From positions 62,001-126,000 of IMG/VR virus record IMGVR_UViG_3300028840_002431: a stretch of 64,000 bases of DNA. One strand, given 5' to 3'. Numbering within the stretch: position 1 is the stretch's first letter; each line of letters begins with the position of its first letter. Under the pieces are notes generated by a model. It had not been told where the DNA came from, did not search any database, and was given only the letters and a program-made list of their open reading frames with translations. A program made the position numbers and the translations under genes. This document shows positions 3,500-62,643 of the stretch, piece by piece.

Positions 3500-3892
3500 T
3501 CAGGACGCGGTAATATCGACCTGCCACTCGTCCTTGGCTTTGTCGTATTGTGCGTGGCCGTACATGTCTATTGCACTGTCCAACCACTTGGAGACTCGCT
3601 CCGCTCCCTCGCGTTCTCCGAATTCAATCAGCTTTACTGTGTTCTCCGGACGATCCTTGAGGTACAGCATCCCCTCGATTCTAACACCGTCAGACCCGTG
3701 ATAATACTTACTCAAGTAAGATCGTCTCAGGTCGATATCAAGGCCGACCGACTTTAGGTAGGGGACTGTGGATTTCAACAAGTTATCAAGATCTCGCCGC
3801 TCGGCCTCGGCGTGTGCGTCAATAATGTCCCTCCACTTGGCGTAGAGGTCCATCTTGGCAGCGGTCTTCTTGCGGCGATCGTAGTTGTACAT
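3500..3892 (-). CDS. hypothetical protein, MYxYDRR N-terminal tag
   Basis: Starts MYNYDRR, coupled to upstream ORF. Confidence 0.75.
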   Translation of the reverse strand: MYNYDRRKKTAAKMDLYAKWRDIIDAHAEAERRDLDNLLKSTVPYLKSVGLDIDLRRSYLSKYYHGSDGVRIEGMLYLKDRPENTVKLIEFGEREGAERVSKWLDSAIDMYGHAQYDKAKDEWQVDITAS

Positions 3893-4185
3893 TACGTGGC
3901 CCGGCGTTTGATAACTTCGAATAGATTGGAAGCATCGACCATCGCGTTAAGCGTCTCACGTCGGAGTTCCGCGAACGTCCGTGAGAGTTGCTCTCCTTCA
4001 CGTACCTCACGCGGCTCCAGGGCTTCCAGCCGTTCCAGGTTGCCGAACAGATCTTCAAAAGTACCGTAAGCCTTGTAAACGTCTACCCGGTCAAGTTCCC
4101 TGAAAGCCTTCGTGAGCGGCTTGGTGAACGTCCAGGAGGGTAAAGGCTCTAGCTGGAGCGCAAGACGGCGGTCGTAGCTGTACAT
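3892..4185 (-). CDS. hypothetical protein, MYxYDRR N-terminal tag
   Basis: Starts MYSYDRR. Confidence 0.75.
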   Translation of the reverse strand: MYSYDRRLALQLEPLPSWTFTKPLTKAFRELDRVDVYKAYGTFEDLFGNLERLEALEPREVREGEQLSRTFAELRRETLNAMVDASNLFEVIKRRAT

Positions 4186-4221
4186 ACCAACCGCTGCCTA
4201 CAAAATGATGCTGAAAAGTTA

Positions 4222-4347
4222 GAGAGCGTTCGAGACGAGAAGCAGGATGTTTGCGATGGGAATCGAACCCACTACTTTCTGTGTGTAAAACAGACGCTCT
4301 ACCCTAAATGAGCTACGCTTGTATGCTTTCTCCGATTGATCGCTCTC
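4222..4347 (-). ncRNA. tRNA-chimeric RNA copy 1: D, anticodon (TAC) and T arms with the conserved stem domain replacing the acceptor stem
   Basis: Terminal stem GAGAGCG/CGCTCTC, CAATC..GCATACAAGC, TAGCTCA..GGTAGAGC, GGTTCGATTCC, ..CTGC..TCTCG. Confidence 0.85.
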
Positions 4348-4486
4348 GGTGGCAGACGTTGGACTCGAACCAACAATTTTGCTTGTGAGCACAGAAGTAT
4401 TGTTCTCTCGCGAGAACGAGTGTTAGGTGCTGATTGCGTACAAACCTACGTTATGATCGTAAGCGGGCCACCCGGCCCAGTCTGCC
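4348..4486 (-). ncRNA. tRNA-chimeric RNA copy 2: tRNA body (loop ATCATAA) with conserved domain in the variable region
   Basis: Acceptor GGCAGAC/GTCTGCC, insert CAGCAC..ACTCG TTCTC GCGA GAGAA CAAT..GTGCT CACAAGC, T arm GTTGG TTCGAGT CCAAC. Confidence 0.85.
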
Positions 4487-4495
4487 TAAAATCTT

Positions 4496-4635
4496 CCCGC
4501 ACCCGAGTCATGAACCTGTTTGATTGCTCGTTTTCTAGACGAGTGCCTAACCACTAGGCTATTTCCAATAGTTTTGGTTTGGAAAACAGGATTCGAACCT
4601 GTGTATGCATGTAAGATTCACCTGTTGGGTACGGG
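4496..4635 (-). ncRNA. tRNA-chimeric RNA copy 3: circularly permuted tRNA (T, acceptor, D, anticodon AGA) closed by the conserved domain
   Basis: CCCGTACC CAAC..TCT TACATGC, T arm, TTTCCAA-ACCAAAACTA-TTGGAAA, D arm, CTCGT CTAGAAA ACGAG, CAGG..ACTCG GGTGCGGG. Confidence 0.85.
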
Positions 4636-4636
4636 T

Positions 4637-4777
4637 TGGAGGGGCTATCGGGAGTCGAACCCTAAAACGCTTGTGAGGACCAGAAATATGGCTCCTTGCA
4701 GAGCCGAGAATCGATCCTGGGTTTTTGGTTTTTCCTCTTCGATAGAAAGGTGACGGACCGTCCGTCTGTATAGCCCC
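4637..4777 (-). ncRNA. tRNA-chimeric RNA copy 4: tRNA body (anticodon ATC) with conserved domain in the variable region, CCA end
   Basis: Acceptor GGGGCTAT/ATAGCCCC-TCCA, insert CAGGATC..TCTCG GCTCT GCAA GGAGC CATA..GGTCCT CACAAGC. Confidence 0.85.
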
Positions 4778-4911: not shown

Positions 4912-5481
4912 TCAAGTAATAATTACACCGCCTGGGCTGATTTCATAACCGATTTTCTTGCCGTCCTTGAGGAACGCCTGAGCCGACCGGGCCAGAAGGG
5001 CAGAGACCACAGCGATGAAGGGCAGATGCTCACCGTCCTCGCAAGTGGCGGCCCCGGCTGCCCCGTCGTCGATGACGAAATTCTCGGTCCAGACCACCCG
5101 GCCGAAAGCTCCGTCGGCGGCCAGCGCTCCGTGGAGACACGGGATCTCGGCCTCCTTGGCGAAACCCTGGACCACGCGCCGAGACTCTGGGTTGTCCAGG
5201 CAGTCGATGACCAGATCGGCACCGCCCAGAAGCTCCTTCTCGTTGTCGGCCGTCAGTTTGTGCGGGACCATGTTGAGCTTGATCCCGAATAGGAACTGCA
5301 TTGCCTGGGCCAGGGACTGCGTCTTGTTCTTGCCGACGCCCGCCTTGCCATGGAACTGGCTCAACGTGTTCTTTTGCTCCACCCGGTCGAAATCGACGAC
5401 CTTCATGGTCGCCTCGTTCCGTAGGAACAGTATCAAATGTGAGCCTAGAGCACCGGCACCTATGATCGTGATGTTCTTCAT
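4912..5481 (-). CDS. ThiF/MoeB/E1-family adenylyltransferase
   Basis: IIGAGALGS, DFDRVEQKN, GKNK, DLVIDCLD. Candidate catalytic Cys in ATCED. Confidence 0.9.
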   Translation of the reverse strand: MKNITIIGAGALGSHLILFLRNEATMKVVDFDRVEQKNTLSQFHGKAGVGKNKTQSLAQAMQFLFGIKLNMVPHKLTADNEKELLGGADLVIDCLDNPESRRVVQGFAKEAEIPCLHGALAADGAFGRVVWTENFVIDDGAAGAATCEDGEHLPFIAVVSALLARSAQAFLKDGKKIGYEISPGGVIIT

Positions 5482-5511
5482 ACCCCTGTGTACGGTTGGC
5501 TGTTGAAAGAC

Positions 5512-5949
5512 CTAAGCATTTTCTTCTTGCCAGAGGGTTTTTAGCCGGTCCCGCTCCTTGGCTATGAAAGCAGCGATCTCTCTGGCATCACCCTGTTCAA
5601 AGCGACTAAGAGGCTCCCGTAGGAACTTGTAAAGGGCCTCTTCGTCTTCTTCTTCGGGCACCTTCTCTCGATCGAAGTCGTAATAGTAATAATGAGGGGC
5701 TTTGGTCAGAACCTGGGCCATCCAGTAGATCACGGCGTAGGCGTACGTCCGTTCACCGAAACTGATCCAGGACTTGTAGTCGAACCCGACGGGCCACTTC
5801 ACCTTCTCGGAATACGCCATGTCCGTGGTCAGCCAAAGCGCCGACGCCTCCGGAAGGGGAGTCATGTACTTGAAGTGTTGTTCCAGAAAGTCGAACATCC
5901 GCTTCTGGTCTTTTTGGCTCCTGGCAGCAACGTAGATTGAGTAGCCCAT
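5512..5949 (-). CDS. hypothetical protein
   Basis: Likely start ATG 5949 coupled to upstream stop. Confidence 0.65.
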   Translation of the reverse strand: MGYSIYVAARSQKDQKRMFDFLEQHFKYMTPLPEASALWLTTDMAYSEKVKWPVGFDYKSWISFGERTYAYAVIYWMAQVLTKAPHYYYYDFDREKVPEEEDEEALYKFLREPLSRFEQGDAREIAAFIAKERDRLKTLWQEENA

Positions 5950-6209
5950 TATGGTCCCGACACACCTGTTCCTTTCTTCTTGTCCCACTTACGAAACTCG
6001 TTCCAGGAGTCGAAGTGGCGTCTCGTCACACCCTTGAAATACTTCCACATATCACTCGCTTTGAACTTGAACGGGCCGCTGACAGCGGCAGCACAATAAC
6101 CACCGGAACAGGTGTATTCCCACTCGCCGGTCTCTTTATTCTCGACACTGCCGAATGTGTCGCCCCCGCAAACGGGACACGAAAACTCTGTCCTGTGTTG
6201 AGTGATCAT
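5949..6209 (-). CDS. small zinc-ribbon-like protein
   Basis: CPVCGG..CSGGYC, overlapping start/stop. Confidence 0.6.
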   Translation of the reverse strand: MITQHRTEFSCPVCGGDTFGSVENKETGEWEYTCSGGYCAAAVSGPFKFKASDMWKYFKGVTRRHFDSWNEFRKWDKKKGTGVSGP

Positions 6210-6409
6210 GGTCTCCGACGATACCCCAGCGACTCCTGGGTGTGTGGTGTTAGCTCCAGGGCGATCTCGAAACTGGTACTAGAATGGGAAGAAGCGACTA
6301 CAGCCACCTCAGGAGGGTTGGCCAGCTTCTTGGCTTGGTCGATGGCCTGAACAAGTTCGCGAACGGTTTGCTCCGTAATCTGAACAGTTGCGCCCTTCAG
6401 GGTAGTCAT
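6206..6409 (-). CDS. hypothetical protein
   Basis: ATGA overlaps at both ends. Confidence 0.5.
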   Translation of the reverse strand: MTTLKGATVQITEQTVRELVQAIDQAKKLANPPEVAVVASSHSSTSFEIALELTPHTQESLGYRRRP

Positions 6410-6792
6410 AGCTTCTGCCACTCCGGGAACGGTCTTTCTTCCGACCGGTCCCACCAACGGTAGCGGTAGCCCTGGAAGCCCCGAATCTTCTGGTCGATCG
6501 TGACAGCTACGGCGTCACCACCTCGAACCAGGGCAAAGCTGTCCTTGAAGTAGACGGGAACGTTCGTGTCGTAGCATACGGGGTCGTCGTCTATCCGTAT
6601 CAACGGCGAGTATCCGATAAGGTGGCCGCTGTAGACCACATAAACACGGTCGCCGGGTTGCAGCTTCTTCGGCGGGCTGCCCCCCATGAACCAACCCCAC
6701 TCCGTGCCGCTCCATTTGGCCCCGGCCGGGTCGCCCTCTGCAATCCAGCGCTTGAGTCCGAAAGACTTGGGCAACGTGACTACAATGTCCAT
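6406..6792 (-). CDS. possible EVE/ASCH (PUA-like) domain protein
   Basis: KLQPGDRVYVVYSGHLIGY resembles the EVE/ASCH core. Confidence 0.45.
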   Translation of the reverse strand: MDIVVTLPKSFGLKRWIAEGDPAGAKWSGTEWGWFMGGSPPKKLQPGDRVYVVYSGHLIGYSPLIRIDDDPVCYDTNVPVYFKDSFALVRGGDAVAVTIDQKIRGFQGYRYRWWDRSEERPFPEWQKL

Positions 6793-7028
6793 CAGGCCGT
6801 TCTTTCGCGTAAAAGCTCCACGACCGCTTCGGCCTGATCCGGCGACAGTCCCTCAGGCCACAGTTCATCAAGCCTGAGCCATTCCCGCAAGACGTTTTTC
6901 TCGTCCTTCGAGATAACTATCTTCGTTTCCTGGGAACCCTCTTCTCTTGTCAGGACGAGGTCGCCACTGGATTTTTCGATACGCGCCAAAAGCCGGTTCC
7001 CCGGCTCACCTATAACAAACGAGGCCAT
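6792..7028 (-). CDS. hypothetical protein
   Basis: ATG 7028 after GGAG RBS. Confidence 0.55.
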   Translation of the reverse strand: MASFVIGEPGNRLLARIEKSSGDLVLTREEGSQETKIVISKDEKNVLREWLRLDELWPEGLSPDQAEAVVELLRERTA

Positions 7029-7030
7029 CT

Positions 7031-7249
7031 TTACTCCTTCAGCCCTTCGAGCAACCAGCGAAGATCCCGTAGATCCGAGTCGTCTACCATTAGCTCGAAC
7101 ACCTCGTCGGGGTCCGGCAAGACCCCCGCGAAGCAAATCCTGTGTTCTATGGAAGGTTCCGGCAGATGCCCGACACACGCATTGTCGCTCAACCGCTTGA
7201 ACCGACAATCCGTGTGCGGACACCAACCAGGACGTTCCTGACCCGCCAT
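7031..7249 (-). CDS. small Cys/His-rich hypothetical protein
   Basis: WCPHTDC..C.GH..H..C, in operon. Confidence 0.55.
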   Translation of the reverse strand: MAGQERPGWCPHTDCRFKRLSDNACVGHLPEPSIEHRICFAGVLPDPDEVFELMVDDSDLRDLRWLLEGLKE

Positions 7250-7253
7250 CGGC

Positions 7254-7520
7254 TCAAACCCCGAAGGGCGTCTTCGGCCGAAGCTGAATCAGGTTGTAGG
7301 GACGTGCGTCGGTTGCGTTGAACCGATCCACGACGTAGTTACCCAGGTCGGGTGCCTGAGCCGGGATACCGGGAATGTCCCCGCCACGGATGGCTTCGGA
7401 GACCCACCCCTTCACGTCGTCGTCAGACGCAGCGAAGAGAACCGGGTCCGGAAGGTCCCCGTTCTGACCCCCGTAGGTGATGTTGACGCGAGCGTCGTTT
7501 TCGTTGATGTTGTCAGCCAT
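7254..7520 (-). CDS. ubiquitin-like (beta-grasp) protein
   Basis: 88 aa, strand-strand-helix pattern, C-terminal strand LIQLRP then KTPFG-V, adjacent to JAB and in operon with E1. Confidence 0.7.
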   Translation of the reverse strand: MADNINENDARVNITYGGQNGDLPDPVLFAASDDDVKGWVSEAIRGGDIPGIPAQAPDLGNYVVDRFNATDARPYNLIQLRPKTPFGV

Positions 7521-7917
7521 GCTGCACCTCTCTTTCTAGCTCGTACCTCGATTCCTTTCGAAGTCTTGGTAGCCATATCGGCTGGTAATATTTGTTGAGA
7601 TTGACGCGGTAGTCGTATTTGTCCGGGCCTTGCCAGACGATGTGAACGAGATGGGTGGAACTCGTGATCCACCAGATTATCCTCCGACCGAGAGCCGTCT
7701 CCACGCCGTTGAAGGTCGTAACGTCCTCGTAAGAGGGACCCGGCACCCCGGAGCCGGGGTGGCTGTGAGCAAATCCTAACACCCTGTCCCGGTTGTCCCA
7801 GATCACGTCCCAGAGCGTTCGGCTGTCTGGAAGGTAGGCCACGGACCGGTCCGTCGGGATATGCCAGAACAGTGGCTTTCCCTCACGATCGACTAGAACT
7901 CCAGCTTCCACAGTCAT
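7513..7917 (-). CDS. JAB/JAMM (MPN+) metallopeptidase
   Basis: N-terminal E (VEAG) and HSHP..PSYED JAMM motif. Confidence 0.85.
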   Translation of the reverse strand: MTVEAGVLVDREGKPLFWHIPTDRSVAYLPDSRTLWDVIWDNRDRVLGFAHSHPGSGVPGPSYEDVTTFNGVETALGRRIIWWITSSTHLVHIVWQGPDKYDYRVNLNKYYQPIWLPRLRKESRYELEREVQHG

Positions 7918-7926
7918 TTCAATACC

Positions 7927-8868
7927 TTAGACGTGCCTGTAAACCACGAGTTGTCCCGTTCGCTCCGCTTCCAGGATAACGGACGGTAGGCTCTCAAGGG
8001 TCAGTAGGTCGTCTCCCTTCTCTCCGGTGTCATGATCTGTTAAACACACCCCAGAATCGATAATCCTAAGAGTTTTCTTGTCGCACGTACATTCGAACCG
8101 CCGCCGCTTGAGCCGGTACTTAACGATCATCTCGTTCTTGCGGTGCCCGGCACGTTGATCCAGAAGCACAGCCCCGCCTACCGCTAAAGCGGCCTTTGCG
8201 GCCTCCTCGAAGTCCAGGAGAGCCATTTCCCGACGGCCAGCGCCGTCTCCCAGCTTCTCGACGATCTCGCGTCTACGGGCCTCCTTTTGACGCTCCTCTT
8301 CTTCCCGCTGGCGCTTTTCGGCAAGCTCCCGCCGACGCTTCTCTGCCTCCTTCCGTTGGAAGATCTCCATCCGGAAAGCGGCATCCAGGGCCGGGGAAAC
8401 ATCCTTGATGTCGGCCACGGAATCCTTGCCGTCCAGGTACGCCGTCAGAACGTCCATCTCCGGACCCAGCGGCATCTCTTGTTGCATGAAAAAGAGCGGG
8501 CCGTCCTCACACATACGCCCGGCAGAGACGTACACGAACCGGTCCAGAAACGGCTCGATCAGGTGGACGCGCTCCGCGTTGGCCACGATATCCGCGATCT
8601 TCGGCTCAACTCGAACGTCACGCGGGACCAGCCTGTCTCCGACCAAATAACCCATGACCTTACCCATGAGCAGATCAGTGTCAGAATCGTCGGCCTGTCG
8701 GAGAACACGCGCCCGCCGACCGTTCAGGGAGAAGACTACCCAACCGTGCTCATCCGGCAAACGGCCGTCGATGGTCCACTGTCGTGAACCCGACCGGAGA
8801 GACCTACCCCCGACCCATGGCGAAACCAGGGTTTCATCCTTAGTCTGTAGTAGGTCTCTCCAAGTCAT
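7927..8868 (-). CDS. coiled-coil protein with putative divergent E2 (UBC-like) C-terminal domain
   Basis: RIIDSGVCL followed by LTLESLPSVI resembles E2 GxICL plus following helix, and sits beside JAB and Ubl. Confidence 0.5.
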   Translation of the reverse strand: MTWRDLLQTKDETLVSPWVGGRSLRSGSRQWTIDGRLPDEHGWVVFSLNGRRARVLRQADDSDTDLLMGKVMGYLVGDRLVPRDVRVEPKIADIVANAERVHLIEPFLDRFVYVSAGRMCEDGPLFFMQQEMPLGPEMDVLTAYLDGKDSVADIKDVSPALDAAFRMEIFQRKEAEKRRRELAEKRQREEEERQKEARRREIVEKLGDGAGRREMALLDFEEAAKAALAVGGAVLLDQRAGHRKNEMIVKYRLKRRRFECTCDKKTLRIIDSGVCLTDHDTGEKGDDLLTLESLPSVILEAERTGQLVVYRHV

Positions 8869-8899: not shown

Positions 8900-10783
8900 T
8901 CAAGCTGCCCAAGCGGGCTTGGTCAGCAACTCAGTGTTGAGGATGAGATCGACCAGCGATACTCTGGGAGCCGCCGCCTTTCTGGACGCCTTGCCCACCG
9001 GAGTAGCCGCGATCAGGTCTCTGATGGTGCGGGGAATCGCGTACGGGTCCGCGAAGATCCCCTCGTCGATCATGAAGCACGGGATACCGAGATTGGCCGC
9101 CGTGTCCTGGACCGCCGTGTAGCCGCGAGTGCCGCCTACCTTGAGGAACCCGAAAGCAACCGGGTTGAGGCCGGAAGACCTCACGGAATCGGAGAAGTCG
9201 TACGCCTCTTCGTCGCCCACGAAGATGAAGATCACGTCTTCATCGTCCTCAGGCTTGAAGGACTGGAGTACCCTGACGCCCGCTCCGTAATCGGTGCCGC
9301 CGCCCGCCCTGAAACCACGGAAAGCTTGCTCGACACCAGCCGACGAGTTCTGCTTGATCTTCACAACACGACCGGAGGTGTTGAACACCGACACGTGAGT
9401 CCGCTCCAGGGGGAACCCCTGTAGGAACTGGGTCAGGTACCGCTTAGCCGTCGGAATGGCCTTGTGCATGGAGGACGAAACGTCCACACAGAAGTAGATT
9501 CTCTGGCTATTGAGCACCTCTGCGACGGCCTTCTTGACAGCGTTGTCGGCCGCCTCCGACAGCTTCTCCTGGGTCTTCTTGGACTTGACACGCTGGGCGA
9601 TGTTGGCCGCCCGCATGTCTTCGGCCTCCTTGACCGCCGTCTCCCACCGAACCCGGATGTCCTGGACATCCAACAGTCCAAGCTCTTCCAGAGTCGGGGT
9701 CGCGATGATCAGGTCCTTGTTGGACAGGGACCCGACCTCGATGGCAGCCGCCATGACAGCCCTGGTCACACCGTCCTTGGGCAGAAGACCCACGACCCGC
9801 TTCCAGTTCGGCCGGTCCTGGGTGATCTTCTCGCAGATCTGCTCTTCGGTCAGACCCTCCCAGGATTCCGCCGCCTTGACCTCCTGGCCGATGGCGATGC
9901 TCCGGTGCCCCTCCTTGGACTGCGCTTGCTTCCAACGAAGGGTCTCGAAGAACTTGCCGGTGTTCGGCTTGTATCCGACCTTACGGGCCAGATCCATCAC
10001 CGTACGCCGGAAGCCCGCGTTGACCAGACCTTCCAGCATCTTGGGGTTCTCTTCCCGGTACCGTAGCCACTTCTCCACGGCCTTGGGCCAACGACCCAGG
10101 AACGGCTTACGAGCGGACTTACCGAAACCGAGATCCCGGTTGATCTTGGCGACGGCCGGTAGGCTCAGAACATCGTGGACCCTCATGAGCAACTTCGGGT
10201 TGAAGCTGACCTTGCCGTCCTTGCCCTTGGTGGTGATCAGGAACATGGCCTCGCCAACGTCACGGTAGTCCTCGTCGAGGAACGCGACCTTGCCCTTGTC
10301 CAGGACCGGATCACCCTTACGGGTTTGAACGAGCATGAAGGCTGCCAGGATGACCTTGAGGTCCCGGTGCTCCTGGCCGTATGCGTAGGAGGCCCACTTG
10401 GCCGCGAACTCGTTATCGAGATTCCAGACTTCCGCGACCTGCTTGTAGACCCACTCAACAACGTCCGGGTACAACCCGGCCGGTTGGTACTTGCCTACAA
10501 CCCGACGACCGTCCCGAACACGCCCGTCATTGCTGAGCTTGCCCAGCTTGACCTTGGTGCTCTTGCGGCCGACCTTACGCAATTCGTAAACGATCTTGTC
10601 GCCGTTCTCCTCTACGTGAGTGACCGGCAACCACTTAGAACCCACGACCGATCCGGTGTCGGTAACTGCGATACCAGCACGGTTGTGGACAGCATGGCCC
10701 GAGTGAGAGAGGACCGTCTGTAGGATTCTCTCAGCCGGTCCGAGATTCTCGTTTTGCATGTTATCCATCCGATCTGCCCGCAC
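8900..10783 (-). CDS. Ro60/TROVE-like protein: long basic helical region plus C-terminal vWA
   Basis: vWA motifs CVDVSSSM, GGGTDY, FIFVGDEE are clear. The TROVE assignment is inferred from architecture and segments KAVEKWL and DLARKVGYKP. Real start may be ATG 10768 or 10759. Confidence 0.65.
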   Translation of the reverse strand: MRADRMDNMQNENLGPAERILQTVLSHSGHAVHNRAGIAVTDTGSVVGSKWLPVTHVEENGDKIVYELRKVGRKSTKVKLGKLSNDGRVRDGRRVVGKYQPAGLYPDVVEWVYKQVAEVWNLDNEFAAKWASYAYGQEHRDLKVILAAFMLVQTRKGDPVLDKGKVAFLDEDYRDVGEAMFLITTKGKDGKVSFNPKLLMRVHDVLSLPAVAKINRDLGFGKSARKPFLGRWPKAVEKWLRYREENPKMLEGLVNAGFRRTVMDLARKVGYKPNTGKFFETLRWKQAQSKEGHRSIAIGQEVKAAESWEGLTEEQICEKITQDRPNWKRVVGLLPKDGVTRAVMAAAIEVGSLSNKDLIIATPTLEELGLLDVQDIRVRWETAVKEAEDMRAANIAQRVKSKKTQEKLSEAADNAVKKAVAEVLNSQRIYFCVDVSSSMHKAIPTAKRYLTQFLQGFPLERTHVSVFNTSGRVVKIKQNSSAGVEQAFRGFRAGGGTDYGAGVRVLQSFKPEDDEDVIFIFVGDEEAYDFSDSVRSSGLNPVAFGFLKVGGTRGYTAVQDTAANLGIPCFMIDEGIFADPYAIPRTIRDLIAATPVGKASRKAAAPRVSLVDLILNTELLTKPAWAA

Positions 10784-10903: not shown

Positions 10904-11209
10904 ATGGACGCTGAAAAAGTCATGACCCGGTACCTGGAGAAGACGGGCCTGGAGTTAGATTCTGACACCCGTGTGGGATTTAAGTACTCGCCAAAAGAGT
11001 CAAAAAAGTCCAAGGTTGAGCGAGTCATGCGGCTCATCAGAGACAAGACAGGTATTGGCCGTAAGGTTGCGGAGGACATTGCCAACGCGATCGTCAGGGG
11101 ACGAGATGTAGTTCGGCTGACCTTCCAGAAGAAATGGCCTATGGTCGAAGGTGTGATAGAAGGTCCCCGTGGAACCTTACCCCTGGAAGAGGCTCAGGCG
11201 ACACTATAA
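10904..11209 (+). CDS. hypothetical protein (VxxRY tag)
   Basis: MDAEKVMTRYL, coupled ORF trio. Confidence 0.7.
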   Translation: MDAEKVMTRYLEKTGLELDSDTRVGFKYSPKESKKSKVERVMRLIRDKTGIGRKVAEDIANAIVRGRDVVRLTFQKKWPMVEGVIEGPRGTLPLEEAQATL

Positions 11210-11520
11210 TGGATCACTTACGCTGGAAGACCGGATACTCTGGGTATGACGAGGAGTTCCTAGATGAACTGGTTGACGACAAAGAGTTAAGAAAGGCGAT
11301 CAGCGACTTTCTCAAAGGGATCACCTCAGAGGGCCAGAAGCTCAACAAGCTCATGGAACGGCGTATAAAACACCTTGCGGACAACATGACCGATTGGGAC
11401 AAAGTCCCCACCAAAGACGTGGTCCGCTACCTCCGACAGTACATGAAGCACGAGTTCGGGGAAGACGACCTTGCGAAAGCCCTGGCAAAGGGCATTATTA
11501 CCGGGGAAGGCTTCTTCTGA
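11209..11520 (+). CDS. hypothetical protein (MDHxRWK tag)
   Basis: TAATG coupling, MDHLRWKTG. Confidence 0.7.
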   Translation: MDHLRWKTGYSGYDEEFLDELVDDKELRKAISDFLKGITSEGQKLNKLMERRIKHLADNMTDWDKVPTKDVVRYLRQYMKHEFGEDDLAKALAKGIITGEGFF

Positions 11521-11825
11521 TGCCCAAGAGCGAACAGGTTGTAGAACGATTCCTAACAGCCGCCCCAAAGAGCGTCAGTATCGAGGACATCAGGGACTTC
11601 ATCAAAAAAGAGAGAACCTGGATGGATCTCGAAGAAGAGGATGACAAGTCCCTGTTGTATACAACGAGAGATCACGGGGACATGGAGAACGACGAGCCGG
11701 GCCGGGAAGACCTGAACCACGCAAAAGCCTTGGGCAGGGCTGTCCTTAGAGAGTTCGGTCGCGCCGTCAAGGTCGAACTCGACTACATAGACGAGTGGAC
11801 CCAACTCACAATCGAACTACGCTAG
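11520..11825 (+). CDS. hypothetical protein (VxxRF tag)
   Basis: TGATG coupling, MPKSEQVVERFLTAA. Confidence 0.7.
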   Translation: MPKSEQVVERFLTAAPKSVSIEDIRDFIKKERTWMDLEEEDDKSLLYTTRDHGDMENDEPGREDLNHAKALGRAVLREFGRAVKVELDYIDEWTQLTIELR

Positions 11826-12893: not shown

Positions 12894-12895
12894 CT

Positions 12896-12969
12896 TGGTG
12901 CGCGTAGAGAGATTCGAACTCCCATGACTCGCTGATCGGGCGAGCGCCTTGCCATTAGACGATACGCGC
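12896..12969 (-). tRNA. atypical tRNA (loop CCGATCA, nominal GAT)
   Basis: Acceptor GCGCGTA/TACGCGC-ACCA, normal D and T arms, C33 and C37. Confidence 0.75.
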
Positions 12970-15186: not shown

Positions 15187-15579
15187 ATGGAAAAGATAGC
15201 CTCACCCAAAGAGCTTGCCGCTGAACTCCAACGGATTCTGGCCTACACGGAAACCGCCGAACCCAGCCGTGAGAAAATAGCCGCCGACCTGAAGGCTCTG
15301 GCCAACAGGGTGGCTTTCCCAGCCCGTAGAACCAAAGGCCCTTCGTTCGGCCAAGAGGGGTGGGAACCAAAATATGACAAGAGCCTCCGGAGAAAATACC
15401 AGAGGGCCATGCGAGGAGTTGACGCCTATCTCGAAAAAGCTCGTGAACTAGCCATCGAGATGGGTTTCCCGCCCGACGAAAAAGAGGGGCAGGATATGAA
15501 TCCAGCCGGGGCGCTTTGGGAAGCAATGGGAAAGGCCCACCGTACCTACAAGTGTAACATCTACTGGATGATCGATTAG
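15187..15579 (+). CDS. hypothetical protein
   Basis: 130-aa ORF filling the gap between two tRNAs. Confidence 0.7.
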   Translation: MEKIASPKELAAELQRILAYTETAEPSREKIAADLKALANRVAFPARRTKGPSFGQEGWEPKYDKSLRRKYQRAMRGVDAYLEKARELAIEMGFPPDEKEGQDMNPAGALWEAMGKAHRTYKCNIYWMID

Positions 15580-15664: not shown

Positions 15665-16309
15665 ATGTATAGTTACGATCGACGGTTCGCCAAATACATC
15701 GTTGAAACACGTTCACGTAAGCCTGGGATCAACGACGATGGTACCGTCACTGTGCTCCACGGAACCTCAACCATCAACGCCGCCCTGATTCGTGAACAGG
15801 GATTCAAACCCTTTGACGCCATGGACGTGGCGACCGTGGTGGCCGAAGCGTACGGCCTTAAGCCTCGTGATATCTACGACAGTGTTTACTTCGAGTTCCC
15901 TAGAGGGCGTCGGGATGTCAACAAGGTGTTTTTCACATCGTCTCCTGAGACCGCACAAGTACACGGAGTCCCCGAATCAATCCAGGACGCCCTGACCGCT
16001 GTATGGGCCGCGAAACACCCAGAATGGTCGCAGCAAGACGCCGCTACAAGAGACGACGTGAGAAAACGAGAGAAGCACAGGAAAGAGTGGATCAGAAAAG
16101 AAGCACAGAGGTTTGGAAAGCCGGAAACCCTCGCCGTCACGTTGCCGTGGGAAGTAGTGGGAGACAACGCCTTTGGGAAGAAGCTAAGTCTCGAACGGTA
16201 CCTGGAAATCGTTGGCGGCCCGCAAGACTGGGACGACCTCTTACACAACTTCTCACTCCCGATATCGGCGTTGCGGGGCACCACCGTCAAGATAGCCCCT
16301 TACCGTTAG
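15665..16309 (+). CDS. putative ADP-ribosyltransferase-fold protein with MYSYDRR tag
   Basis: VLHGTS..I..QGF and VFFTS motifs. Confidence 0.55.
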   Translation: MYSYDRRFAKYIVETRSRKPGINDDGTVTVLHGTSTINAALIREQGFKPFDAMDVATVVAEAYGLKPRDIYDSVYFEFPRGRRDVNKVFFTSSPETAQVHGVPESIQDALTAVWAAKHPEWSQQDAATRDDVRKREKHRKEWIRKEAQRFGKPETLAVTLPWEVVGDNAFGKKLSLERYLEIVGGPQDWDDLLHNFSLPISALRGTTVKIAPYR

Positions 16310-16393: not shown

Positions 16394-16394
16394 C

Positions 16395-17864: not shown

Positions 17865-18299
17865 CTAATCTAAAAAGTTCTCTAGAAGCGACTCAAGGTC
17901 GTCGAGTTCGAGGCGTCTCAAGGCCAGCCGGAAGTAGAAGGCTCCTGGGTCTCGTTCTAACTCCCGTTGAAGACCCTGGATGGCCTTCACGTGCCTGAGC
18001 AGTTCCTGGGCCTTGGGCTTCGTGGCTTGGATGGCCCGGCTCTGGTGTTGTATGTTTTCCCAGTCTCTCAGGTGCCTACGAAGGCTGGCCGCGAGGTGGT
18101 CGGGCTTCTTCATGTAGTAGGCCAACTCGCTCTTACGAGGCTTCTTGACGACCCCCATGTCCTTGAACAACTTCCGGTAGAGGGGAAGCGCCCTGTCCAT
18201 GTCCCTTTGGATGACGATATCGACTAACTCATCGATCCGCCTCTCCAGGTCGGCTTTGGTGGCCTCGAATGCTACGCGCCTGTCGTACCCATAGCCCAT
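17865..18299 (-). CDS. hypothetical protein (YDRR tag)
   Basis: Likely start MGYGYDRRVA. Confidence 0.7.
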   Translation of the reverse strand: MGYGYDRRVAFEATKADLERRIDELVDIVIQRDMDRALPLYRKLFKDMGVVKKPRKSELAYYMKKPDHLAASLRRHLRDWENIQHQSRAIQATKPKAQELLRHVKAIQGLQRELERDPGAFYFRLALRRLELDDLESLLENFLD

Positions 18300-19871: not shown

Positions 19872-20138
19872 ATGGACCACGACCGCTGGAAAGATAAGTC
19901 AGCCGCCCCGAAGCCAAGCGTAGAGCAAGCCGGTAAGGACGCCTTCAAACAACTGGACGAGGCCATCAATCATATAGAAAAGGCCATCCCCCTCTTTACC
20001 GGCGCGAGAGACTACCTATCCGGCTGGTCCCACACCTTCCGGGAAATGCACAGAGACGTGGACCGCCTTGTAGGCGACGCGGAAGAGATAGAGCGCGACG
20101 CGAACAAGATCCGCATGGACCTCTGGAAATACCGTTAG
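19872..20138 (+). CDS. hypothetical protein (MDHxRWK tag)
   Basis: Likely start MDHDRWK. Confidence 0.7.
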   Translation: MDHDRWKDKSAAPKPSVEQAGKDAFKQLDEAINHIEKAIPLFTGARDYLSGWSHTFREMHRDVDRLVGDAEEIERDANKIRMDLWKYR

Positions 20139-20139
20139 G

Positions 20140-20463
20140 ATGGTTGAAGCCACCGTAGTTGCCGACCGGTACGCCGCCGCTAAGGTCAAGAAAATCAAGG
20201 ACCAGGGGTGGGATATTACCGTCCCGGTCATCCAGGGGGCCGCTGCCGTCGATGGTGCTGTGGAAGTGTACGCCGAAAAAGACGGGGTAAAGCTGAAACT
20301 CCGCTACTGGTTCGAGCGGTATACCCGCCGTGTCTTTCTCAAGGCCGAAGGCGTCTTCAATGTGGCCATGCCTCGACAGAACCTCGAACGACAAATCCCG
20401 TCCGCCTTCAAGAAAATGATCCGACGCCACGTCCTGAGGCACATCGACAAGCTACCCAGATAG
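20140..20463 (+). CDS. hypothetical protein (VxxRYAAA tag)
   Basis: MVEATVVADRYAAA. Confidence 0.7.
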   Translation: MVEATVVADRYAAAKVKKIKDQGWDITVPVIQGAAAVDGAVEVYAEKDGVKLKLRYWFERYTRRVFLKAEGVFNVAMPRQNLERQIPSAFKKMIRRHVLRHIDKLPR

Positions 20464-20583: not shown

Positions 20584-20835
20584 ATGGACCCAAGAAAAGC
20601 CTTTGAGCAAGCTCTTACAGCCTCCAAACCTCTGGCCGAAGCCTTCGAGGAACTTGACCGGGCCTCAGACCACGCCAATGGCCTACAACTGGCGCTCGTT
20701 AATGCTCGCCGCGTTATGAAAATGGAAGAGATTGACCGGAACGAGATAAGAGAGATCGAAAAGCTCACGCGCACCGCCGAGACCCTTCTGAGTGATGTAA
20801 ACGACTTTAGATACAAGTTGAAGATGAAGTATTAA
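20584..20835 (+). CDS. hypothetical protein (PRKAFE tag)
   Basis: MDPRKAFEQAL, shared with 32367..32672. Confidence 0.7.
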   Translation: MDPRKAFEQALTASKPLAEAFEELDRASDHANGLQLALVNARRVMKMEEIDRNEIREIEKLTRTAETLLSDVNDFRYKLKMKY

Positions 20836-27639: not shown

Positions 27640-27885
27640 TCAACGCATGAACAACCCACTGCGACTGTCCCGAAACTGGTTGACTCTTTTAACCGCCTTT
27701 AGAAGGTTCTTGGCGTCGTGGAGAACATCCTCCGAGAGACCCTGTACCGGGTCCCACTTCCCGTCCGAATCGCCCATCAAAGTCTCGTCCAGTTCCGCCA
27801 AGTTGCTCTTGAGGGACCGCATGGCCTTGAGAATAGCACCCTGTAGGCGTGGGATGGACGCCGTCCGACGGTCGTAGGAGTACAT
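27640..27885 (-). CDS. hypothetical protein (MYSYDRR tag)
   Basis: MYSYDRRTA. Confidence 0.72.
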   Translation of the reverse strand: MYSYDRRTASIPRLQGAILKAMRSLKSNLAELDETLMGDSDGKWDPVQGLSEDVLHDAKNLLKAVKRVNQFRDSRSGLFMR

Positions 27886-58729: not shown

Positions 58730-60217
58730 ATGACGAGACCTACGTTTGATGTTTCTAAGAAGGGGCTGGCGAAGACACTGACCAGACGCCCTATCGAGTT
58801 CGTCGTTCTGGAGTTAATTCAGAACGCCCTCGATGAAGACTCGACCCGTGTAGAGGTCGGAGTACACCCGGTCCCCGACAAGCGTGGCCTTTATACATTA
58901 CACGTCGAGGACGACAACCCGGAAGGGTTCAAAGACTTGAGCCACGCATACACACTCTTCGCGGAGTCGCTCAAAGGTTCCAATCCGGACCAGCGCGGGC
59001 GCTACAATCTCGGAGAGAAACTGGTCATCGCCGTGTGCCAGTATTCTTACATCCGGACCACGACCGGGACCGTAGAGTTCAAGGACGACCAACGGTTCCA
59101 TCGCCGCGAGCGTACCGAGAAAGGTTCCATCTTCCACGGCGAGATTCGGTTAAAGAAGGATGACTTGGCTCGCATCGAAGAAGCCGTGCGCCAGACCATC
59201 ATGCCGCCCGGTATCGAAATCTGGTTCAACGGTCGGATGAACGACGAGTGGCGACCCGAGAAAACGTTCGAAGCCACGCTGGCCACCGAGAAGACCGACG
59301 AAGAAGGCTACCTACGCCGGACCCGTCGGAAGACCAAGATCGAGGTCTACGAAGCCGACGGCGAAGCCCAACTTTACGAGATGGGTATCCCGGTCGTGGC
59401 CATTGACTGTGCGTGGCACATCAACGTCTGCCAAAAGGTCCCCCTCAACGTGGACCGGGACAACGTGACGCCCGCCTACATGAGGGAACTCCTCGCTCTC
59501 GTGCTCAACGAGATGCACGAGGAACTGGACGAGGACAACGCCAGGAGCGCCTGGGTTGACGAAGCCCTGGAGACCGGAGACATCAACAACGACGCCGTGG
59601 ACGCCGTCCTCACCGCCCGCTACGGAGAGAAACGAGTCGTTGCCGACCCCAGCGACCCGGAAGGCACGAAGCTCGCGGTGTCCAAAGGCTACAGTGTCAT
59701 CCAAGCCGGGTCCTTCAACAAAGCCCAGTGGGAAAACATCCGACAGAGCGGGGCCGTGCTCCCGGCCGGGAAAGTGACCCCCAGCCCCAAAGCTTGGTCC
59801 GACGACCCGGACGCGAAGATGGCCGACTACATCCCCGAAGACAAATGGTCGCCGGGCATGAAGCGGGTGGCCGTCTACGCCCGGAGACTCGCCTACCTCC
59901 TCATGGACGAGTCGAGCCTGACGGTTTCCTACGTCAGGGTGCCCAACAACTGGTCCGCCTGTTACGGACCGGGCGAGCTTACCTTCAACCTCCGGTGGCG
60001 GAGTAAGCAGTGGTTCGAGGACGCCCACTTCCATATCGAGGATCTGGACAGCCTACTCATCCACGAGTTCGGACACCACTACAGTTCGGACCATCTGAGC
60101 AAGGCGTACCACCGGGCGCTGTGCGACCTGGGAGCCAAGCTCAAGTCGCTGGCCATGTCCGGCAAGCTCCGAGAGCCGGTAAAGAAGCTGAAGCCCAAGA
60201 AAGAGAAGGCTGCCTAA
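58730..60217 (+). CDS. GHKL ATPase with C-terminal HExxH domain
   Basis: ELIQNALD, VEDDNPEG, GRYNLGEK, LIHEFGHH. Confidence 0.82.
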   Translation: MTRPTFDVSKKGLAKTLTRRPIEFVVLELIQNALDEDSTRVEVGVHPVPDKRGLYTLHVEDDNPEGFKDLSHAYTLFAESLKGSNPDQRGRYNLGEKLVIAVCQYSYIRTTTGTVEFKDDQRFHRRERTEKGSIFHGEIRLKKDDLARIEEAVRQTIMPPGIEIWFNGRMNDEWRPEKTFEATLATEKTDEEGYLRRTRRKTKIEVYEADGEAQLYEMGIPVVAIDCAWHINVCQKVPLNVDRDNVTPAYMRELLALVLNEMHEELDEDNARSAWVDEALETGDINNDAVDAVLTARYGEKRVVADPSDPEGTKLAVSKGYSVIQAGSFNKAQWENIRQSGAVLPAGKVTPSPKAWSDDPDAKMADYIPEDKWSPGMKRVAVYARRLAYLLMDESSLTVSYVRVPNNWSACYGPGELTFNLRWRSKQWFEDAHFHIEDLDSLLIHEFGHHYSSDHLSKAYHRALCDLGAKLKSLAMSGKLREPVKKLKPKKEKAA

Positions 60218-60392
60218 GTACGATTGTAGATGCTCTCCAGCTTCTTGAGTTGCTTGGCGGTGAGGTTCTGCCCTCTTTGAAGACGCTCCTCGATATTAAT
60301 CACGAAGTCCTCTTCCCACTCATCCAATTCGAAGTCCTCGTCTAACCGGAGGCAATCGTTGATGGCTCCTATCATATCCAGCGGCGTAGCCA

Positions 60393-60614
60393 TCAGTTGC
60401 TCTCCCGGTCTGGGAGGTCGAACAACTTGGAGAGGTCCTTCGTTATGTCCGCTTCCGTGCGCCCGTAGGTGATGACAGCCTGACCGTCCATCCTGAACGG
60501 CTGTAGGTCGATAACGATCTGCTTGCCCTGCCTCAGGAGTTCGAGGTTGGTTTCGGACAGACCCAGGATAACGACCGGCTTGCCTTCGTTGTTAGTGACG
60601 CCCAGTTTGATCAT
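60393..60614 (-). CDS. small hypothetical protein
   Basis: GGAGG RBS before MIKLG. Confidence 0.6.
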   Translation of the reverse strand: MIKLGVTNNEGKPVVILGLSETNLELLRQGKQIVIDLQPFRMDGQAVITYGRTEADITKDLSKLFDLPDRESN

Positions 60615-60993
60615 GCGAGCCAACCCTCCTGAAACAATCCAGTGGGCCGAGCACAAGACTTTGCCCACACACCGGACACGGGTCCCCGACCACAAGCCCG
60701 TCGTGCTTGCCGTGCTCCGGGCAGAAGACCTGGAACACAGCTTCGACTCTACCCCAACCGGGGACGCCGTTGTGTTCCTGGGTACCAGCCAACCCGTTGA
60801 GGACGCCTAACAAGCCGACGCCGAACTTACCCCCATCGGCTGCTACCTGGATTGTCGGGTGCTCAGCCAAGGCTTTGTTGCACGGGACTCTTGCCTCCGT
60901 CAGAGCGTAGACGGCTGCCGGGTCTGACTCCAACGCGCTGTTCATCACCTCGACGATGCGATCCGCTATCAGTTCATCAAGTTCTTTTTCCAT
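60592..60993 (-). CDS. hypothetical protein
   Basis: GGTGTA-N9-ATG. Confidence 0.7.
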   Translation of the reverse strand: MEKELDELIADRIVEVMNSALESDPAAVYALTEARVPCNKALAEHPTIQVAADGGKFGVGLLGVLNGLAGTQEHNGVPGWGRVEAVFQVFCPEHGKHDGLVVGDPCPVCGQSLVLGPLDCFRRVGSHDQTGRH

Positions 60994-61012
60994 GGCCTAC
61001 CTTACACCACCG

Positions 61013-61690
61013 TCACCGCTTCTCGAACCGATACCCGAAATACGCAATATCTTTAGCGTATCTCTTTTCCACAATCTCTCTCCGCTTCTCATTGTAGTAT
61101 TTACTGTAGTGTTCGTGGTCGGTCTTTAGTGTATGAGGAAGCGCTGTCTGAGGCAGTCCCAGATCCCGGCACACGCAATCAAAGTCTTCTTGGAGCCGCT
61201 CAAATTGAATAAACCGAAAGGGTGCCTCCACGCCCGGCTGTGTCACGAAGTCCAACACAGGGTCCAGCAATAACCCTTTCCCGGTACCTTGCTTCGGGAA
61301 CTGAGCTTCCGGTCTTCCATCTCTAGTTTCTATAATCCGGAACCAGTGGTCCAAGGACACACGCTCGTACACCTGACTATAATAAAAGTATCCGGAAACG
61401 ACACGATCCCACGGGTTACGAGCGGTAGCAAAAAAATAGAACCGTTTTAACGCTTTCGGGTCAAAAAGACGGGCAAAGTAATCCAGCCTCGCGTGTTTAA
61501 TATCGTCGCCAGAGATACGGACACACACATTATCGTTGTCGAAGTGTGGGTACGACGTTATAACCCCATCGGCGTAGGGAGTCAGAGCAACCTCTATGGA
61601 GTTCCCACCGGTTTTGGCCGGGTGTATAAATATAAAGTTGTGCTTGTAGGAAATCACCCCGCGTGCCTGAATATCTGGAACAGTCCACAC
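61013..61690 (-). CDS. sulfotransferase family 2 protein
   Basis: FIFIHPAKTGGNSI, RNPWDRVVSGYFY, FERLQEDF, DIAYFGY. Confidence 0.9.
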   Translation of the reverse strand: MWTVPDIQARGVISYKHNFIFIHPAKTGGNSIEVALTPYADGVITSYPHFDNDNVCVRISGDDIKHARLDYFARLFDPKALKRFYFFATARNPWDRVVSGYFYYSQVYERVSLDHWFRIIETRDGRPEAQFPKQGTGKGLLLDPVLDFVTQPGVEAPFRFIQFERLQEDFDCVCRDLGLPQTALPHTLKTDHEHYSKYYNEKRREIVEKRYAKDIAYFGYRFEKR

Positions 61691-61947
61691 CCTACTTGCG
61701 TGTAATACACCTTAAGCTTCTCGCCCTTCCAGTCATAATACTTGTCGAACGGTTCGTAGCGGACTGTGTCAGCATATAACTCTCTTCCGATAACCTTGCC
61801 TTCTTCGTCTCTTTTGTCTTTCCATCTCGTGCGAACAAAGACCAGTTTGCCCGTAGTGTTGGTATAACCCTTCTTTCCAAAAGACCTGAACACATAGGTC
61901 TTTCCAGCCCGGAGATCCTTGTACTGTTTGACTGGTACCTTCTTCAC
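61654..61947 (-). CDS. hypothetical protein
   Basis: 97-aa ORF. Confidence 0.55.
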   Translation of the reverse strand: MKKVPVKQYKDLRAGKTYVFRSFGKKGYTNTTGKLVFVRTRWKDKRDEEGKVIGRELYADTVRYEPFDKYYDWKGEKLKVYYTQVGCGLFQIFRHAG

Positions 61948-61983
61948 ACGGCGTAATACACCTTTTTTGGCGATCCTAGAACA

Positions 61984-62643
61984 ATGAACATCCTCACCTT
62001 ACGAGTTGCCGCGAGGTTCGCAGCCCGGAGCAGTTACCGGGTAGACCGGATGAGAGTCCGCAGGGCACTGAGAATCAATCACCCGGATGCTATAGAAGAC
62101 TCCAAGAAATACCACGGCGGCTACTCCGTAGCCCGTTTCGAGCACGTCCCCATATCCAAAATCAAACTGCCGCCAATCTGGAAACCCTCAAGAGCCGTCA
62201 GAATCAGAAAGGCGATTAAAGAGGGAAAGGCGTTACCGCCTATACACCTGGGACCCAATTACGAGATCTCCGACGGCATCCATAGAACCAATGTGTCTAA
62301 AGAGTTTGGCTTTACCCACGTCCCCGCCATTATCACAGAGTGGGTAGAGACCCCCGATGAAATCGAATTACCCGAGCCTGAGAAACCTCGATTGGATGTT
62401 GGAGACTGGGTCAAAACCCGCGAGAAGTGGGACGGACGGGAATACGGTTGGATCGAAGAACAACTCCTCTATGCTTTCGACAGAAGGGTAAAAAGATGGA
62501 AGTACGCTGTGGCCTTGGTCAAGCGTGGGGACGACTGGCCCGACATTCTGGACCTGAGAGACTCAGAATTTGATCCGGCGCGAGTACCCTCCTGGGTCAA
62601 GAAACATAGGCAGGACTGGATCAAGAAATACAAAGAGAGTTAG
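61984..62643 (+). CDS. ParB/Srx-like domain protein (RVAARFAA tag)
   Basis: LPPIHL..ISDGIHR..VPA. Confidence 0.7.
   Translation: MNILTLRVAARFAARSSYRVDRMRVRRALRINHPDAIEDSKKYHGGYSVARFEHVPISKIKLPPIWKPSRAVRIRKAIKEGKALPPIHLGPNYEISDGIHRTNVSKEFGFTHVPAIITEWVETPDEIELPEPEKPRLDVGDWVKTREKWDGREYGWIEEQLLYAFDRRVKRWKYAVALVKRGDDWPDILDLRDSEFDPARVPSWVKKHRQDWIKKYKES

What the first reader, a model, noticed from the sequence alone, without database searches (positions are those of the whole stretch)
3500..62643. Unrelated proteins share short N-terminal tags, possibly capsid-targeting or processing signals
Seen: MY(S/N)YDRR in ORFs 3500, 3892, 15665 and 27640, and GYDRR in 17865. MD(H)xxWK in 11209, 12549, 13198 and 19872. 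(V/I)xxR(Y/F) in 10904, 11520, 20140, 28746, 34368 and 61984. PRKAFExAL in 20584 and 32367. The bodies are dissimilar and the tags often end in Ala. Established: T4 internal proteins share a roughly 10-aa capsid targeting sequence removed by the prohead protease. Inference: these mark packaged and injected cargo, including an ART-like enzyme, an AAA ATPase and a ParB-like protein. Alternatively they are mobile expression cassettes reused by recombination.
Basis: partly seen in the sequence, partly recalled or inferred. Interest (0 to 1): 0.68.

Follow-up and report, generated by a model that had tools for sequence, protein, structure and literature searches.

The report
Swappable address tags on jumbo-phage proteins
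A 416-kb uncultivated phage puts a few short, interchangeable peptide tags on the ends of about 80 otherwise unrelated proteins; they most likely direct cargo into the virus particle, as phage T4's capsid-targeting sequence does.

Summary

Conservation is at protein level. Codon sharing at identical residues matches plain codon usage, upstream DNA is unrelated, and the tags persist in a relative with 48% rather than 55% GC.

The tags are modules. They sit on unrelated folds (AAA ATPase, topoisomerase IB, SprT-like, ParB-like) and swap between orthologues. The window's AAA ATPase family carries tag B in most relatives but tag A or C in others.

The capsid-targeting reading is supported only by context:
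- Tagged small genes lie directly after the capsid gene.
- A core protein beside the terminase keeps the V..RF tag in all 11 relatives.
- The prohead protease starts with a C-like peptide.
- Tagged proteins are basic.
- The capsid protein is hyperconserved.

No binding or proteomic evidence exists. A conserved phage ClpX makes a degron or hub-docking reading a live rival.

A fifth tag, C-terminal LWDHL on about 40 small proteins, was also found.

The parts
3500..3892 (-). Tag A protein (MYNYDRR...), 130 aa
   Evidence: G001 orthologue lacks the tag
3892..4185 (-). Tag A protein (MYSYDRR...), 97 aa; stop 5 codons upstream of the tag
15665..16309 (+). Tag A protein, 214 aa, weak PARP/ART-like lead; homologue P0272 has YSYDFR, P0273 has no tag
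17865..18299 (-). Tag A protein (MGYGYDRR...), 144 aa from the ATG at 18299
27640..27885 (-). Tag A protein (MYSYDRR...), 81 aa; stop 2 codons upstream
11209..11520 (+). Tag B protein (MDHLRWKT...), 103 aa
12549..12893 (+). Tag B protein (GTG start, DHSIWKT...), 114 aa
13198..14394 (+). Tag B AAA+ ATPase (GTG start, DSRWKT...), 398 aa; orthologues elsewhere carry tag B (36 of 120), tag A-like (6), tag C (1) or none
19872..20138 (+). Tag B protein (MDHDRWKD...), 88 aa
10904..11209 (+). Tag C protein (..KVMTRYLE..), 101 aa; G001 orthologue keeps the tag as KVVARFLE
11520..11825 (+). Tag C protein (..QVVERFL..), 101 aa; its body in G001 sits behind tag A
20140..20463 (+). Tag C protein (..VVADRYAAAK), 107 aa
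28746..29135 (-). Tag C protein (..RIAARFA..), 129 aa
34368..34799 (+). Tag C protein (..KVVTRYAAAK), 143 aa
61984..62643 (+). Tag C ParB-like nuclease, 219 aa; LTLRVAARF is identical to the tag of the core 134-aa protein beside the terminase
20584..20835 (+). Tag D protein (MDPRKAFE..), 83 aa
32367..32672 (-). Tag D protein (MGKPRKAFE..), 101 aa
30998..31357 (-). The only window member of the C-terminal LWDHL tag family (119 aa)
15187..15579 (+). Protein whose first ~43 residues (MEKIA.P.ELA..) form a further shared N-terminal module, found on six otherwise different G001 proteins

Best explanation
The motifs are protein-level, modular terminal address tags (short linear motifs). Four N-terminal families are A M(x0-3)YxYDRR, B MD(x1-3)[RK]WK[TV], C [RK][VI][VA]xR[YF][LA], and D M(x1-2)PRKAFE. 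They are grafted onto unrelated, fast-turning-over and mostly basic proteins.

Shown: the tags exist, are selected as peptides, sit at the termini, are exchangeable between orthologues, and are conserved across a large clade of uncultivated jumbo phages.

Inferred: they dock their carriers onto a highly conserved prohead or virion component (scaffold N-domain, the hyperconserved HK97-type capsid protein, or the portal). The carriers are then built into the particle and delivered with the DNA, as with the T4 capsid-targeting sequence. Tag removal by the prohead protease is possible but not shown.

I put about 0.95 on the tags being modular and selected as peptides. The 0.42 confidence given here is for the virion-targeting function.
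For: Protein-level selection:
- Same-codon rate at identical residues equals the codon-usage expectation: A 0.418 vs 0.402, B 0.382 vs 0.348, D 0.333 vs 0.412.
- Ser uses both AGY and TCN codons, and upstream DNA is dissimilar.
- The tags persist in G001, which has 48% GC against 55%.

Modularity:
- Carriers include AAA, TopoIB, SprT-like and ParB-like proteins.
- Orthologue h2 has tag C in G000 and tag A in G001, at 56% identity over 202 aa.
- h4 paralogues carry B or C, and the A9 family carries A or C.
- The AAA family carries B, A or C.
- Tags occur in tandem (A9, D6) and rarely at a C-terminus (YSYDRR*, HTYDHR*).

Virion context:
- Four consecutive tag-C genes follow the capsid gene.
- In G001 the same place holds A, B and C tags.
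- The core 134-aa protein beside TerL keeps V9, R12 and F13 invariant in 11 relatives.
- The protease starts MAFLKYAKAT, and the portal neighbour has ERFATK, extended to EVARRFATK in G005.
- The slot before the protease holds A-like or C tags.
- B and D tags cluster next to a tail-hub-like gene.

Other support:
- Tagged proteins have median pI near 9 against 6.0 (p = 9e-5).
- The capsid protein is 92-99% identical among relatives whose portal is 64-84% identical, so it is a plausible invariant receptor.
- T-even internal proteins are likewise diverse with only the CTS conserved (PMC3012670).
Against: - There are no proteomic, cleavage or binding data.
- The complex prediction (capsid + scaffold + first 60 residues of the ParB-like protein) gave no answer.
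- By an automatic regex only 6 of 32 head-module genes are tagged against 38 of 525 elsewhere (p = 0.03), so most tagged genes, including all those in the window, lie outside structural modules.
- No shared late-promoter motif links them to structural genes.
- Four different tags for one destination is unlike T4.
- Only tag D contains a phi-x-Glu motif of the kind T4 and phiKZ proteases cut.
Confidence: 0.42

Rival explanations
1. The tags are terminal degrons or adaptor-like docking peptides for the phage-encoded ClpX unfoldase (working with host ClpP) or another AAA+ machine, and they time the removal or remodelling of phage proteins.
For: - A full ClpX (zinc finger + AAA + D2-small) is encoded at genome 296503-297768 and conserved in all five relatives tested.
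- ClpX is known to read several distinct N- and C-terminal motif classes (own knowledge, Flynn et al. 2003). This matches the strict terminal position and the several tag families.
- The phage carries its own tmRNA.
- ClpX and the LWDHL gene block share the CCGGTGTAATAT promoter-like motif, which is absent from structural regions.
- Tag C, R-V-[VA]-x-R, loosely recalls the SspB LRVVK ClpX-binding peptide. This is from memory and only a lead.
Against: - The phage has no ClpP.
- It is hard to see why the prohead protease, a conserved terminase-adjacent core protein and the genes following the capsid gene would carry degrons.
- Tandem tag copies suggest avidity rather than pore engagement.
Confidence: 0.2
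2. The tags dock carriers onto some other conserved intracellular hub, such as the replisome clamp, RNA polymerase, phage DNA or RNA, or GroEL, and so concentrate nucleic-acid enzymes and small effectors at one site in the infected cell.
For: - Carriers include DNA enzymes (TopoIB, ParB-like nuclease, SprT-like protease) and are basic.
- Arg plus aromatic cores resemble clamp-binding or RNA-binding peptides (own knowledge, a lead only).
- Most tagged genes lie outside virion modules.
Against: - No candidate hub was identified.
- The head-module enrichment and the tag-like N-termini of head proteins are left unexplained.
Confidence: 0.15
3. The tagged proteins are remnants of a few old paralogous families in which only the N-terminus stayed recognisable. 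The tag would then be part of a conserved fold, not a module.
For: Many small B, C and D carriers are about 100 aa and look helical. Weak similarities exist, for example B4 with B5 at E = 0.027.
Against: - The same tags sit on unrelated Pfam domains.
- Orthologous bodies carry different tags.
- Tags lie outside the mapped domains.
Confidence: 0.08
4. The conservation is at nucleotide level: reused promoter/RBS/start cassettes, recombination sites or translation-initiation signals.
For: In the LWDHL tag the first Leu uses CTC in 30 of 43 copies, and the same-codon rate is slightly raised (0.495 vs 0.393).
Against: - For A, B and D the codon identity is at expectation.
- Upstream 90 nt are unrelated.
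- The peptides survive a 7-point GC shift in G001.
- Variation is confined to synonymous or conservative changes, and the frame is always the coding one.
Confidence: 0.03

Closest known systems
T4 capsid-targeting sequence (CTS) of the internal proteins IPI-III and Alt
   Same: A short (10-20 aa) N-terminal peptide is shared by otherwise diverse, basic, fast-evolving proteins. Only the tag is conserved across relatives (PMC3012670, PMC5694885).
   Different: - There are at least four distinct N-terminal families instead of one, with no sequence likeness to the T4 CTS.
- Only tag D has a Glu cleavage motif.
- The capsid protein is a 292-aa HK97 type with a separate acidic scaffold.
- About 45 carriers include enzymes encoded far from the head genes.
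- Packaging is unproven.
Encapsulin cargo-loading peptides and the HK97 protease C-terminal targeting tail
   Same: Short terminal peptides load unrelated cargo into an HK97-fold shell by binding its inner face or its delta domain (own knowledge).
   Different: Those are mostly C-terminal with one motif per system. Here the tags are N-terminal and of several kinds, and the receptor is unknown.
ClpX recognition motifs and the SspB XB peptide
   Same: Several unrelated terminal motif classes are read by one machine, and a phage ClpX is present.
   Different: There is no match to the E. coli motifs beyond a loose resemblance. Carriers include head-assembly proteins.
Effector delivery motifs (RxLR, PEXEL, MIX)
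   Same: A conserved short motif sits on a large, rapidly turning-over repertoire of unrelated small proteins.
   Different: Those belong to eukaryotic or secretion-system contexts. This is an analogy of logic only.

Membership tests
T4-type capsid targeting sequence | Short N-terminal peptide shared by otherwise unrelated proteins of one phage | tested here: met
T4-type capsid targeting sequence | Carriers are incorporated into the prohead and found in virions | not testable with these tools
   Only context is available: head-module clustering. No isolate or proteome exists; only DNA runs were found.
T4-type capsid targeting sequence | Tag ends at a prohead-protease site (phi-x-Glu in T4) and is removed | tested here: inconclusive
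   Tag D always contains A-F-E. Tags A, B and C have no fixed Glu, and downstream phi-x-E occurs about as often as chance allows (inspection). A head maturation protease is present.
T4-type capsid targeting sequence | Binds the scaffolding core | tested here: inconclusive
   Complex prediction of capsid + scaffold + tag-C N-terminus gave no answer, score 0.16 against a mark of 0.32.
ClpX degron / XB peptide | Cognate ClpX present | tested here: met
ClpX degron / XB peptide | Partner ClpP encoded by the phage | tested here: not met
   PF00574 is absent from G000. Host ClpP could still serve.
ClpX degron / XB peptide | Tag confers ClpX binding or degradation | not testable with these tools
   Needs biochemistry.
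Tat (twin-arginine) signal peptide | RR motif followed by a hydrophobic h-region and an AxA site | tested here: not met
   Tag A has RR, but the following 20 residues are polar or charged.
DNA-level mobile cassettes (PeSL-like) | Nucleotide conservation extending into non-coding flanks | tested here: not met

The most novel reading that the evidence does not exclude
This clade of huge phages runs a multi-tag protein-sorting code. At least five terminal peptide families mark about 15% of the proteome. The N-terminal tags A-D address cargo to the particle. The C-terminal LWDHL tag addresses a rapidly changing arsenal of about 40 small early proteins to a second destination, such as ClpX or a host hub. 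Tags are shuffled between genes as portable modules.
Probability: 0.25. Interest if true: 0.9.

Novelty: new variant of a known kind. Interest (0 to 1): 0.8.

Why it matters
If the tags are virion-targeting signals, they give a sequence-only way to predict which proteins of uncultivated huge phages are packaged and injected. Here that would include a topoisomerase, nucleases, an AAA ATPase and a possible ADP-ribosyltransferase.

The tags would also be portable handles for loading foreign proteins into large capsids.

Whatever the function, tag swapping on orthologues shows that short linear motifs evolve as exchangeable modules in phages. The pairing of invariant tags with a 92-99% conserved capsid protein suggests why that protein is frozen.

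Tried and rejected
- **Complex prediction** (capsid alignment + scaffold alignment + residues 1-60 of ORF 61984) gave no answer, score 0.16. It is evidence neither way.
- **Promoter classes.** The only repeated motif, CCGGTGTAATAT, lies in non-structural regions and is not upstream of the tagged genes. TATAAA-type and the scaffold-upstream CTATAAA motif are not repeated genome-wide. Temporal class remains unknown.
- **AlphaFold2 of the core 134-aa tag-C protein** gave pLDDT 47, mostly disordered.
- **PDB sequence searches** of the 636-aa protein, the A9 protein and ORF 15665 found nothing. The Atlas search found nothing for the 636-aa protein.
- **Literature** search for the motifs found nothing relevant. 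The Tunturi phage paper has no proteomics.
- **Tunturi_5 and LR745208** lack tag A, and LR745208 lacks tag D. Tunturi_5 N-termini in the two regions read show no tags.
- **Sequencing runs.** Only DNA runs hold the locus.
- **An all-pairs scoring script** timed out and was replaced by blastp-short.
- **Tat signal and DNA cassette readings** were rejected (see membership tests).
Full report
**What the window is.** The window is bases 62001-126000 of a single 416,539-bp contig at 55% GC. It is a phage. The contig encodes a portal, GroEL and helicases, an HK97-type major capsid protein and a head maturation protease, and a large terminase. The window itself holds 42 tRNA genes and a tmRNA.

The nearest isolate is Tunturiibacter phage Tunturi_5, with 38% portal identity. 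IMG/VR holds closer uncultivated relatives:
- G001: 398 kb, terminal repeats, portal 84% identical, GC 48%.
- G002-G005: portals 63-71% identical.

Only DNA runs from sediment and seawater metagenomes hold the locus. All reading used genetic code 11.

**Observation.** The motifs recur across the whole genome:

| Tag | Count in G000 | Chance expectation |
|---|---|---|
| A (Y.YDRR) | 12 six-frame hits; 9 directly follow a start codon, 1 ends an ORF | 0.10 (Markov-shuffled genomes) |
| D (PRKAFE) | 7 hits, all 1-2 residues after Met | 0.03 |
| B (MD(x1-3)[RK]WK[TV]) | 8 N-termini | 0.75 (core pattern, residue shuffle) |
| C ([VI]xxR[YF]) | about 20 N-termini | 1.5 (strict core pattern: 12 hits in called proteins) |

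Hits fall in the first 30 residues far more often than the 13.8% expected: A 10 of 12, C 20 of 37, D 8 of 8, B 11 of 31 (p = 1e-7, 9e-9, 1e-7 and 2e-3).

An unbiased comparison of 40-residue segments gave two large N-terminal clusters (24 and 22 proteins) and one C-terminal cluster (29). Internal segments gave clusters of at most 4.

**Protein or DNA.** At positions with the same amino acid, the share of identical codons equals what genome codon usage predicts: A 0.418 vs 0.402, B 0.382 vs 0.348, D 0.333 vs 0.412. Serine in tag A uses AGC, AGT, TCC and TCA, and arginine uses five codons. The 90 nt upstream of the tagged genes are unrelated. G001 has a GC content 7 points lower yet carries 3 A tags, 4-5 B, about 9 C and 10 D, all N-terminal. 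The conservation is in the peptide, so the cassette alternative falls.

**Modularity.** Beyond residue 20 the tagged proteins have no significant similarity to each other. Carriers include an AAA ATPase with tag B, a SprT-like protein with tag A, a type IB topoisomerase with two copies of tag C and a ParB-like nuclease with tag C.

Tags swap on homologous bodies:
- The gene after the capsid gene (h2) has tag C in G000. Its G001 orthologue, 56% identical over 202 aa, begins MYSYDHRK.
- The lysine-rich h4 family has tag C or tag B.
- The 487-aa A9 family has tag A (twice in tandem) or tag C.
- The body of window ORF 11520 sits behind tag A in G001.

The clearest case is the window's AAA ATPase. 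It has 120 listed homologues at 40-65% identity, from contigs up to 620 kb. Of these, 36 start with tag B, six with [SD]YDRR-type tag A, one with tag C, and others with variants (LWKTA, DPWN) or none.

Tags also occur in tandem (A9; PRKAFE..PRVAFE) and rarely at a C-terminus. Only 39% of N-tagged proteins have a G001 homologue over half their length, against 51% for untagged ones.

**Context pointing to the particle.** The gene order on the minus strand is as follows:
1. Protease (15688-17163).
2. An acidic, Gln-rich 401-aa scaffold-like protein.
3. A 212-aa protein.
4. The capsid protein (12804-13682).
5. Four consecutive genes whose products start with tag C, one of them extremely lysine-rich.

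In G001 the same place holds genes with tags A, B and C and a 43-residue MEKIA module.

Other head-module proteins carry tag-like N-termini:
- A 134-aa protein two genes upstream of TerL keeps [LK][RK]V[AV][AT]RF in all 11 relatives, with V9, R12 and F13 invariant. The window's ParB-like protein copies its LTLRVAARF exactly.
- The protease begins MAFLKYAKAT.
- The 944-aa portal neighbour begins MERFATK, extended to EVARRFATK in G005.
- The small gene before the protease carries TYDRR in G000 and G001, tag C in G005 and G008, and a C-terminal HTYDHR in G004.

Tags B and D cluster beside a 1429-aa gene with weak tail-hub (DUF2460) similarity.

N-tagged proteins are basic, with median pI near 9 against 6.0 (p = 9e-5). 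The capsid protein is 92-99% identical among relatives whose portals are 64-84% identical. More than 100 database clusters are at least 86% identical to it. An invariant peptide needs an invariant receptor, and this protein is the obvious candidate. That step is inference.

**What weakens the capsid reading.** By a strict regex the head module is only three-fold enriched (6 of 32 against 38 of 525, p = 0.03). All window carriers lie among tRNA genes. No late-promoter motif could be defined. The single complex prediction gave no answer. The core tag-C protein is predicted disordered.

The phage encodes a complete ClpX, conserved in all relatives, without ClpP. ClpX is known to read several terminal motif classes, so a degron or adaptor reading remains open. 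That holds especially for the fifth tag.

**The fifth tag.** [KR][NTD]LW[DE]H[LIV], followed by 1-10 residues and a stop, occurs 47 times in six-frame translation. The stricter LWDH[LIV] occurs 43 times against 0.33 expected. Variants are LYDHL and L[FY]DC[LV]KD. Most copies lie at the ends of small, often CxxC-rich ORFs at 133-180 kb; one lies in the window at 30998-31357.

G001 has 55, and more distant relatives 0-2. Only 19% of these proteins have a G001 homologue. None lies in a head module. Their block shares the CCGGTGTAATAT promoter-like motif with ClpX.

**Comparison with the known.** T-even internal proteins are described as highly diverse, with only the capsid targeting sequence conserved. 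That sequence is a 10-20-residue N-terminal propeptide removed by the prohead protease (PMC3012670 and PMC5694885). The present tags follow the same logic. They differ in number, in sequence and in capsid type, and nothing is known about their cleavage. A full-text search found neither motif in a relevant paper. M-x-N-PRKAFE occurs only in G000-like and G001 contigs in IMG/VR, whereas tags A, B and C extend across the wider clade.

**Verdict.** The DNA-level alternative is rejected. Capsid or virion targeting is the best-supported mechanism at about 0.4. ClpX or hub docking stands at about 0.35 combined.

Noticed in passing
window 30998-31357 (-); genome 126-181 kb and 231-238 kb (L005-L007, L010): A C-terminal tag [KR][NTD]LWDHL plus 1-10 residues sits on about 40 small, often CxxC-rich proteins. 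Six-frame hits: 47 for the looser pattern; 43 for LWDH[LIV] against 0.33 expected. G001 has 55, and more distant relatives almost none. Variants are LYDHL and L[FY]DC[LV]KD.
   Followed up: partly
window 4912-8868 (-): A possible phage ubiquitin-like conjugation cluster: a ThiF/E1-like protein (4912-5481, E = 2.5e-22), a Prok-JAB protein (7513-7917), and small neighbours that could be the Ubl and E2. A VWA protein (8900-10783) follows.
   Followed up: partly
window 2058-31894 (-): 42 tRNA genes and a tmRNA (26026-26405, tag peptide ANDNAAPLAIAA), all on the minus strand, are interleaved with the small tagged ORFs. Many of those ORFs run the opposite way.
   Followed up: no
L001:12804-13682 (genome): The 292-aa HK97-type capsid protein is 92-99% identical among relatives whose portal is 64-84% identical and whose median protein identity is 65%. 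More than 100 database clusters are at least 86% identical, from contigs up to 620 kb.
   Followed up: partly
L014:503-1768 (genome 296503-297768, -): The phage encodes a ClpX with zinc finger, conserved in five relatives. PF00574 found no ClpP in the genome. A GroEL lies at genome 58775-60430.
   Followed up: partly
window 739, 2690, 3051, 8885, 10821, 26429, 27531, 51188 (motif starts): The promoter-like motif CCGGTGTAA[TG]A occurs 37 times genome-wide, often only 15-17 nt before the ATG, which suggests leaderless or very short leaders. It is absent from the structural regions.
   Followed up: partly
window 46485-50503 (-): Four adjacent fibre-like ORFs (488, 227, 190 and 411 aa) share a ~40-residue N-terminal module (..P.P..G.L.LFVD..G..K.KD..G). 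A 78-aa ORF at genome 126383-126619 combines this module with a C-terminal LWDHV tag.
   Followed up: no
window 21264-25619: Lipid-metabolism genes: a beta-ketoacyl synthase (21518-22774), an adjacent small ACP-like ORF (21264-21530, not tested) and a phosphatidylserine decarboxylase (24543-25619).
   Followed up: no
window 41887-43296 (-) and 58730-60217 (+): Two large proteins have GHKL/HATPase_c-like N-termini. Pfam gave a weak match for the second only.
   Followed up: no
L001:14437-15642 (genome): The scaffold-like protein has an invariant extreme N-terminus (M-R-E-R-[ST]-T-W-N) in all 11 relatives, reminiscent of tag B. The capsid N-arm (QVISEYIKTAAG) resembles tag C.
   Followed up: no
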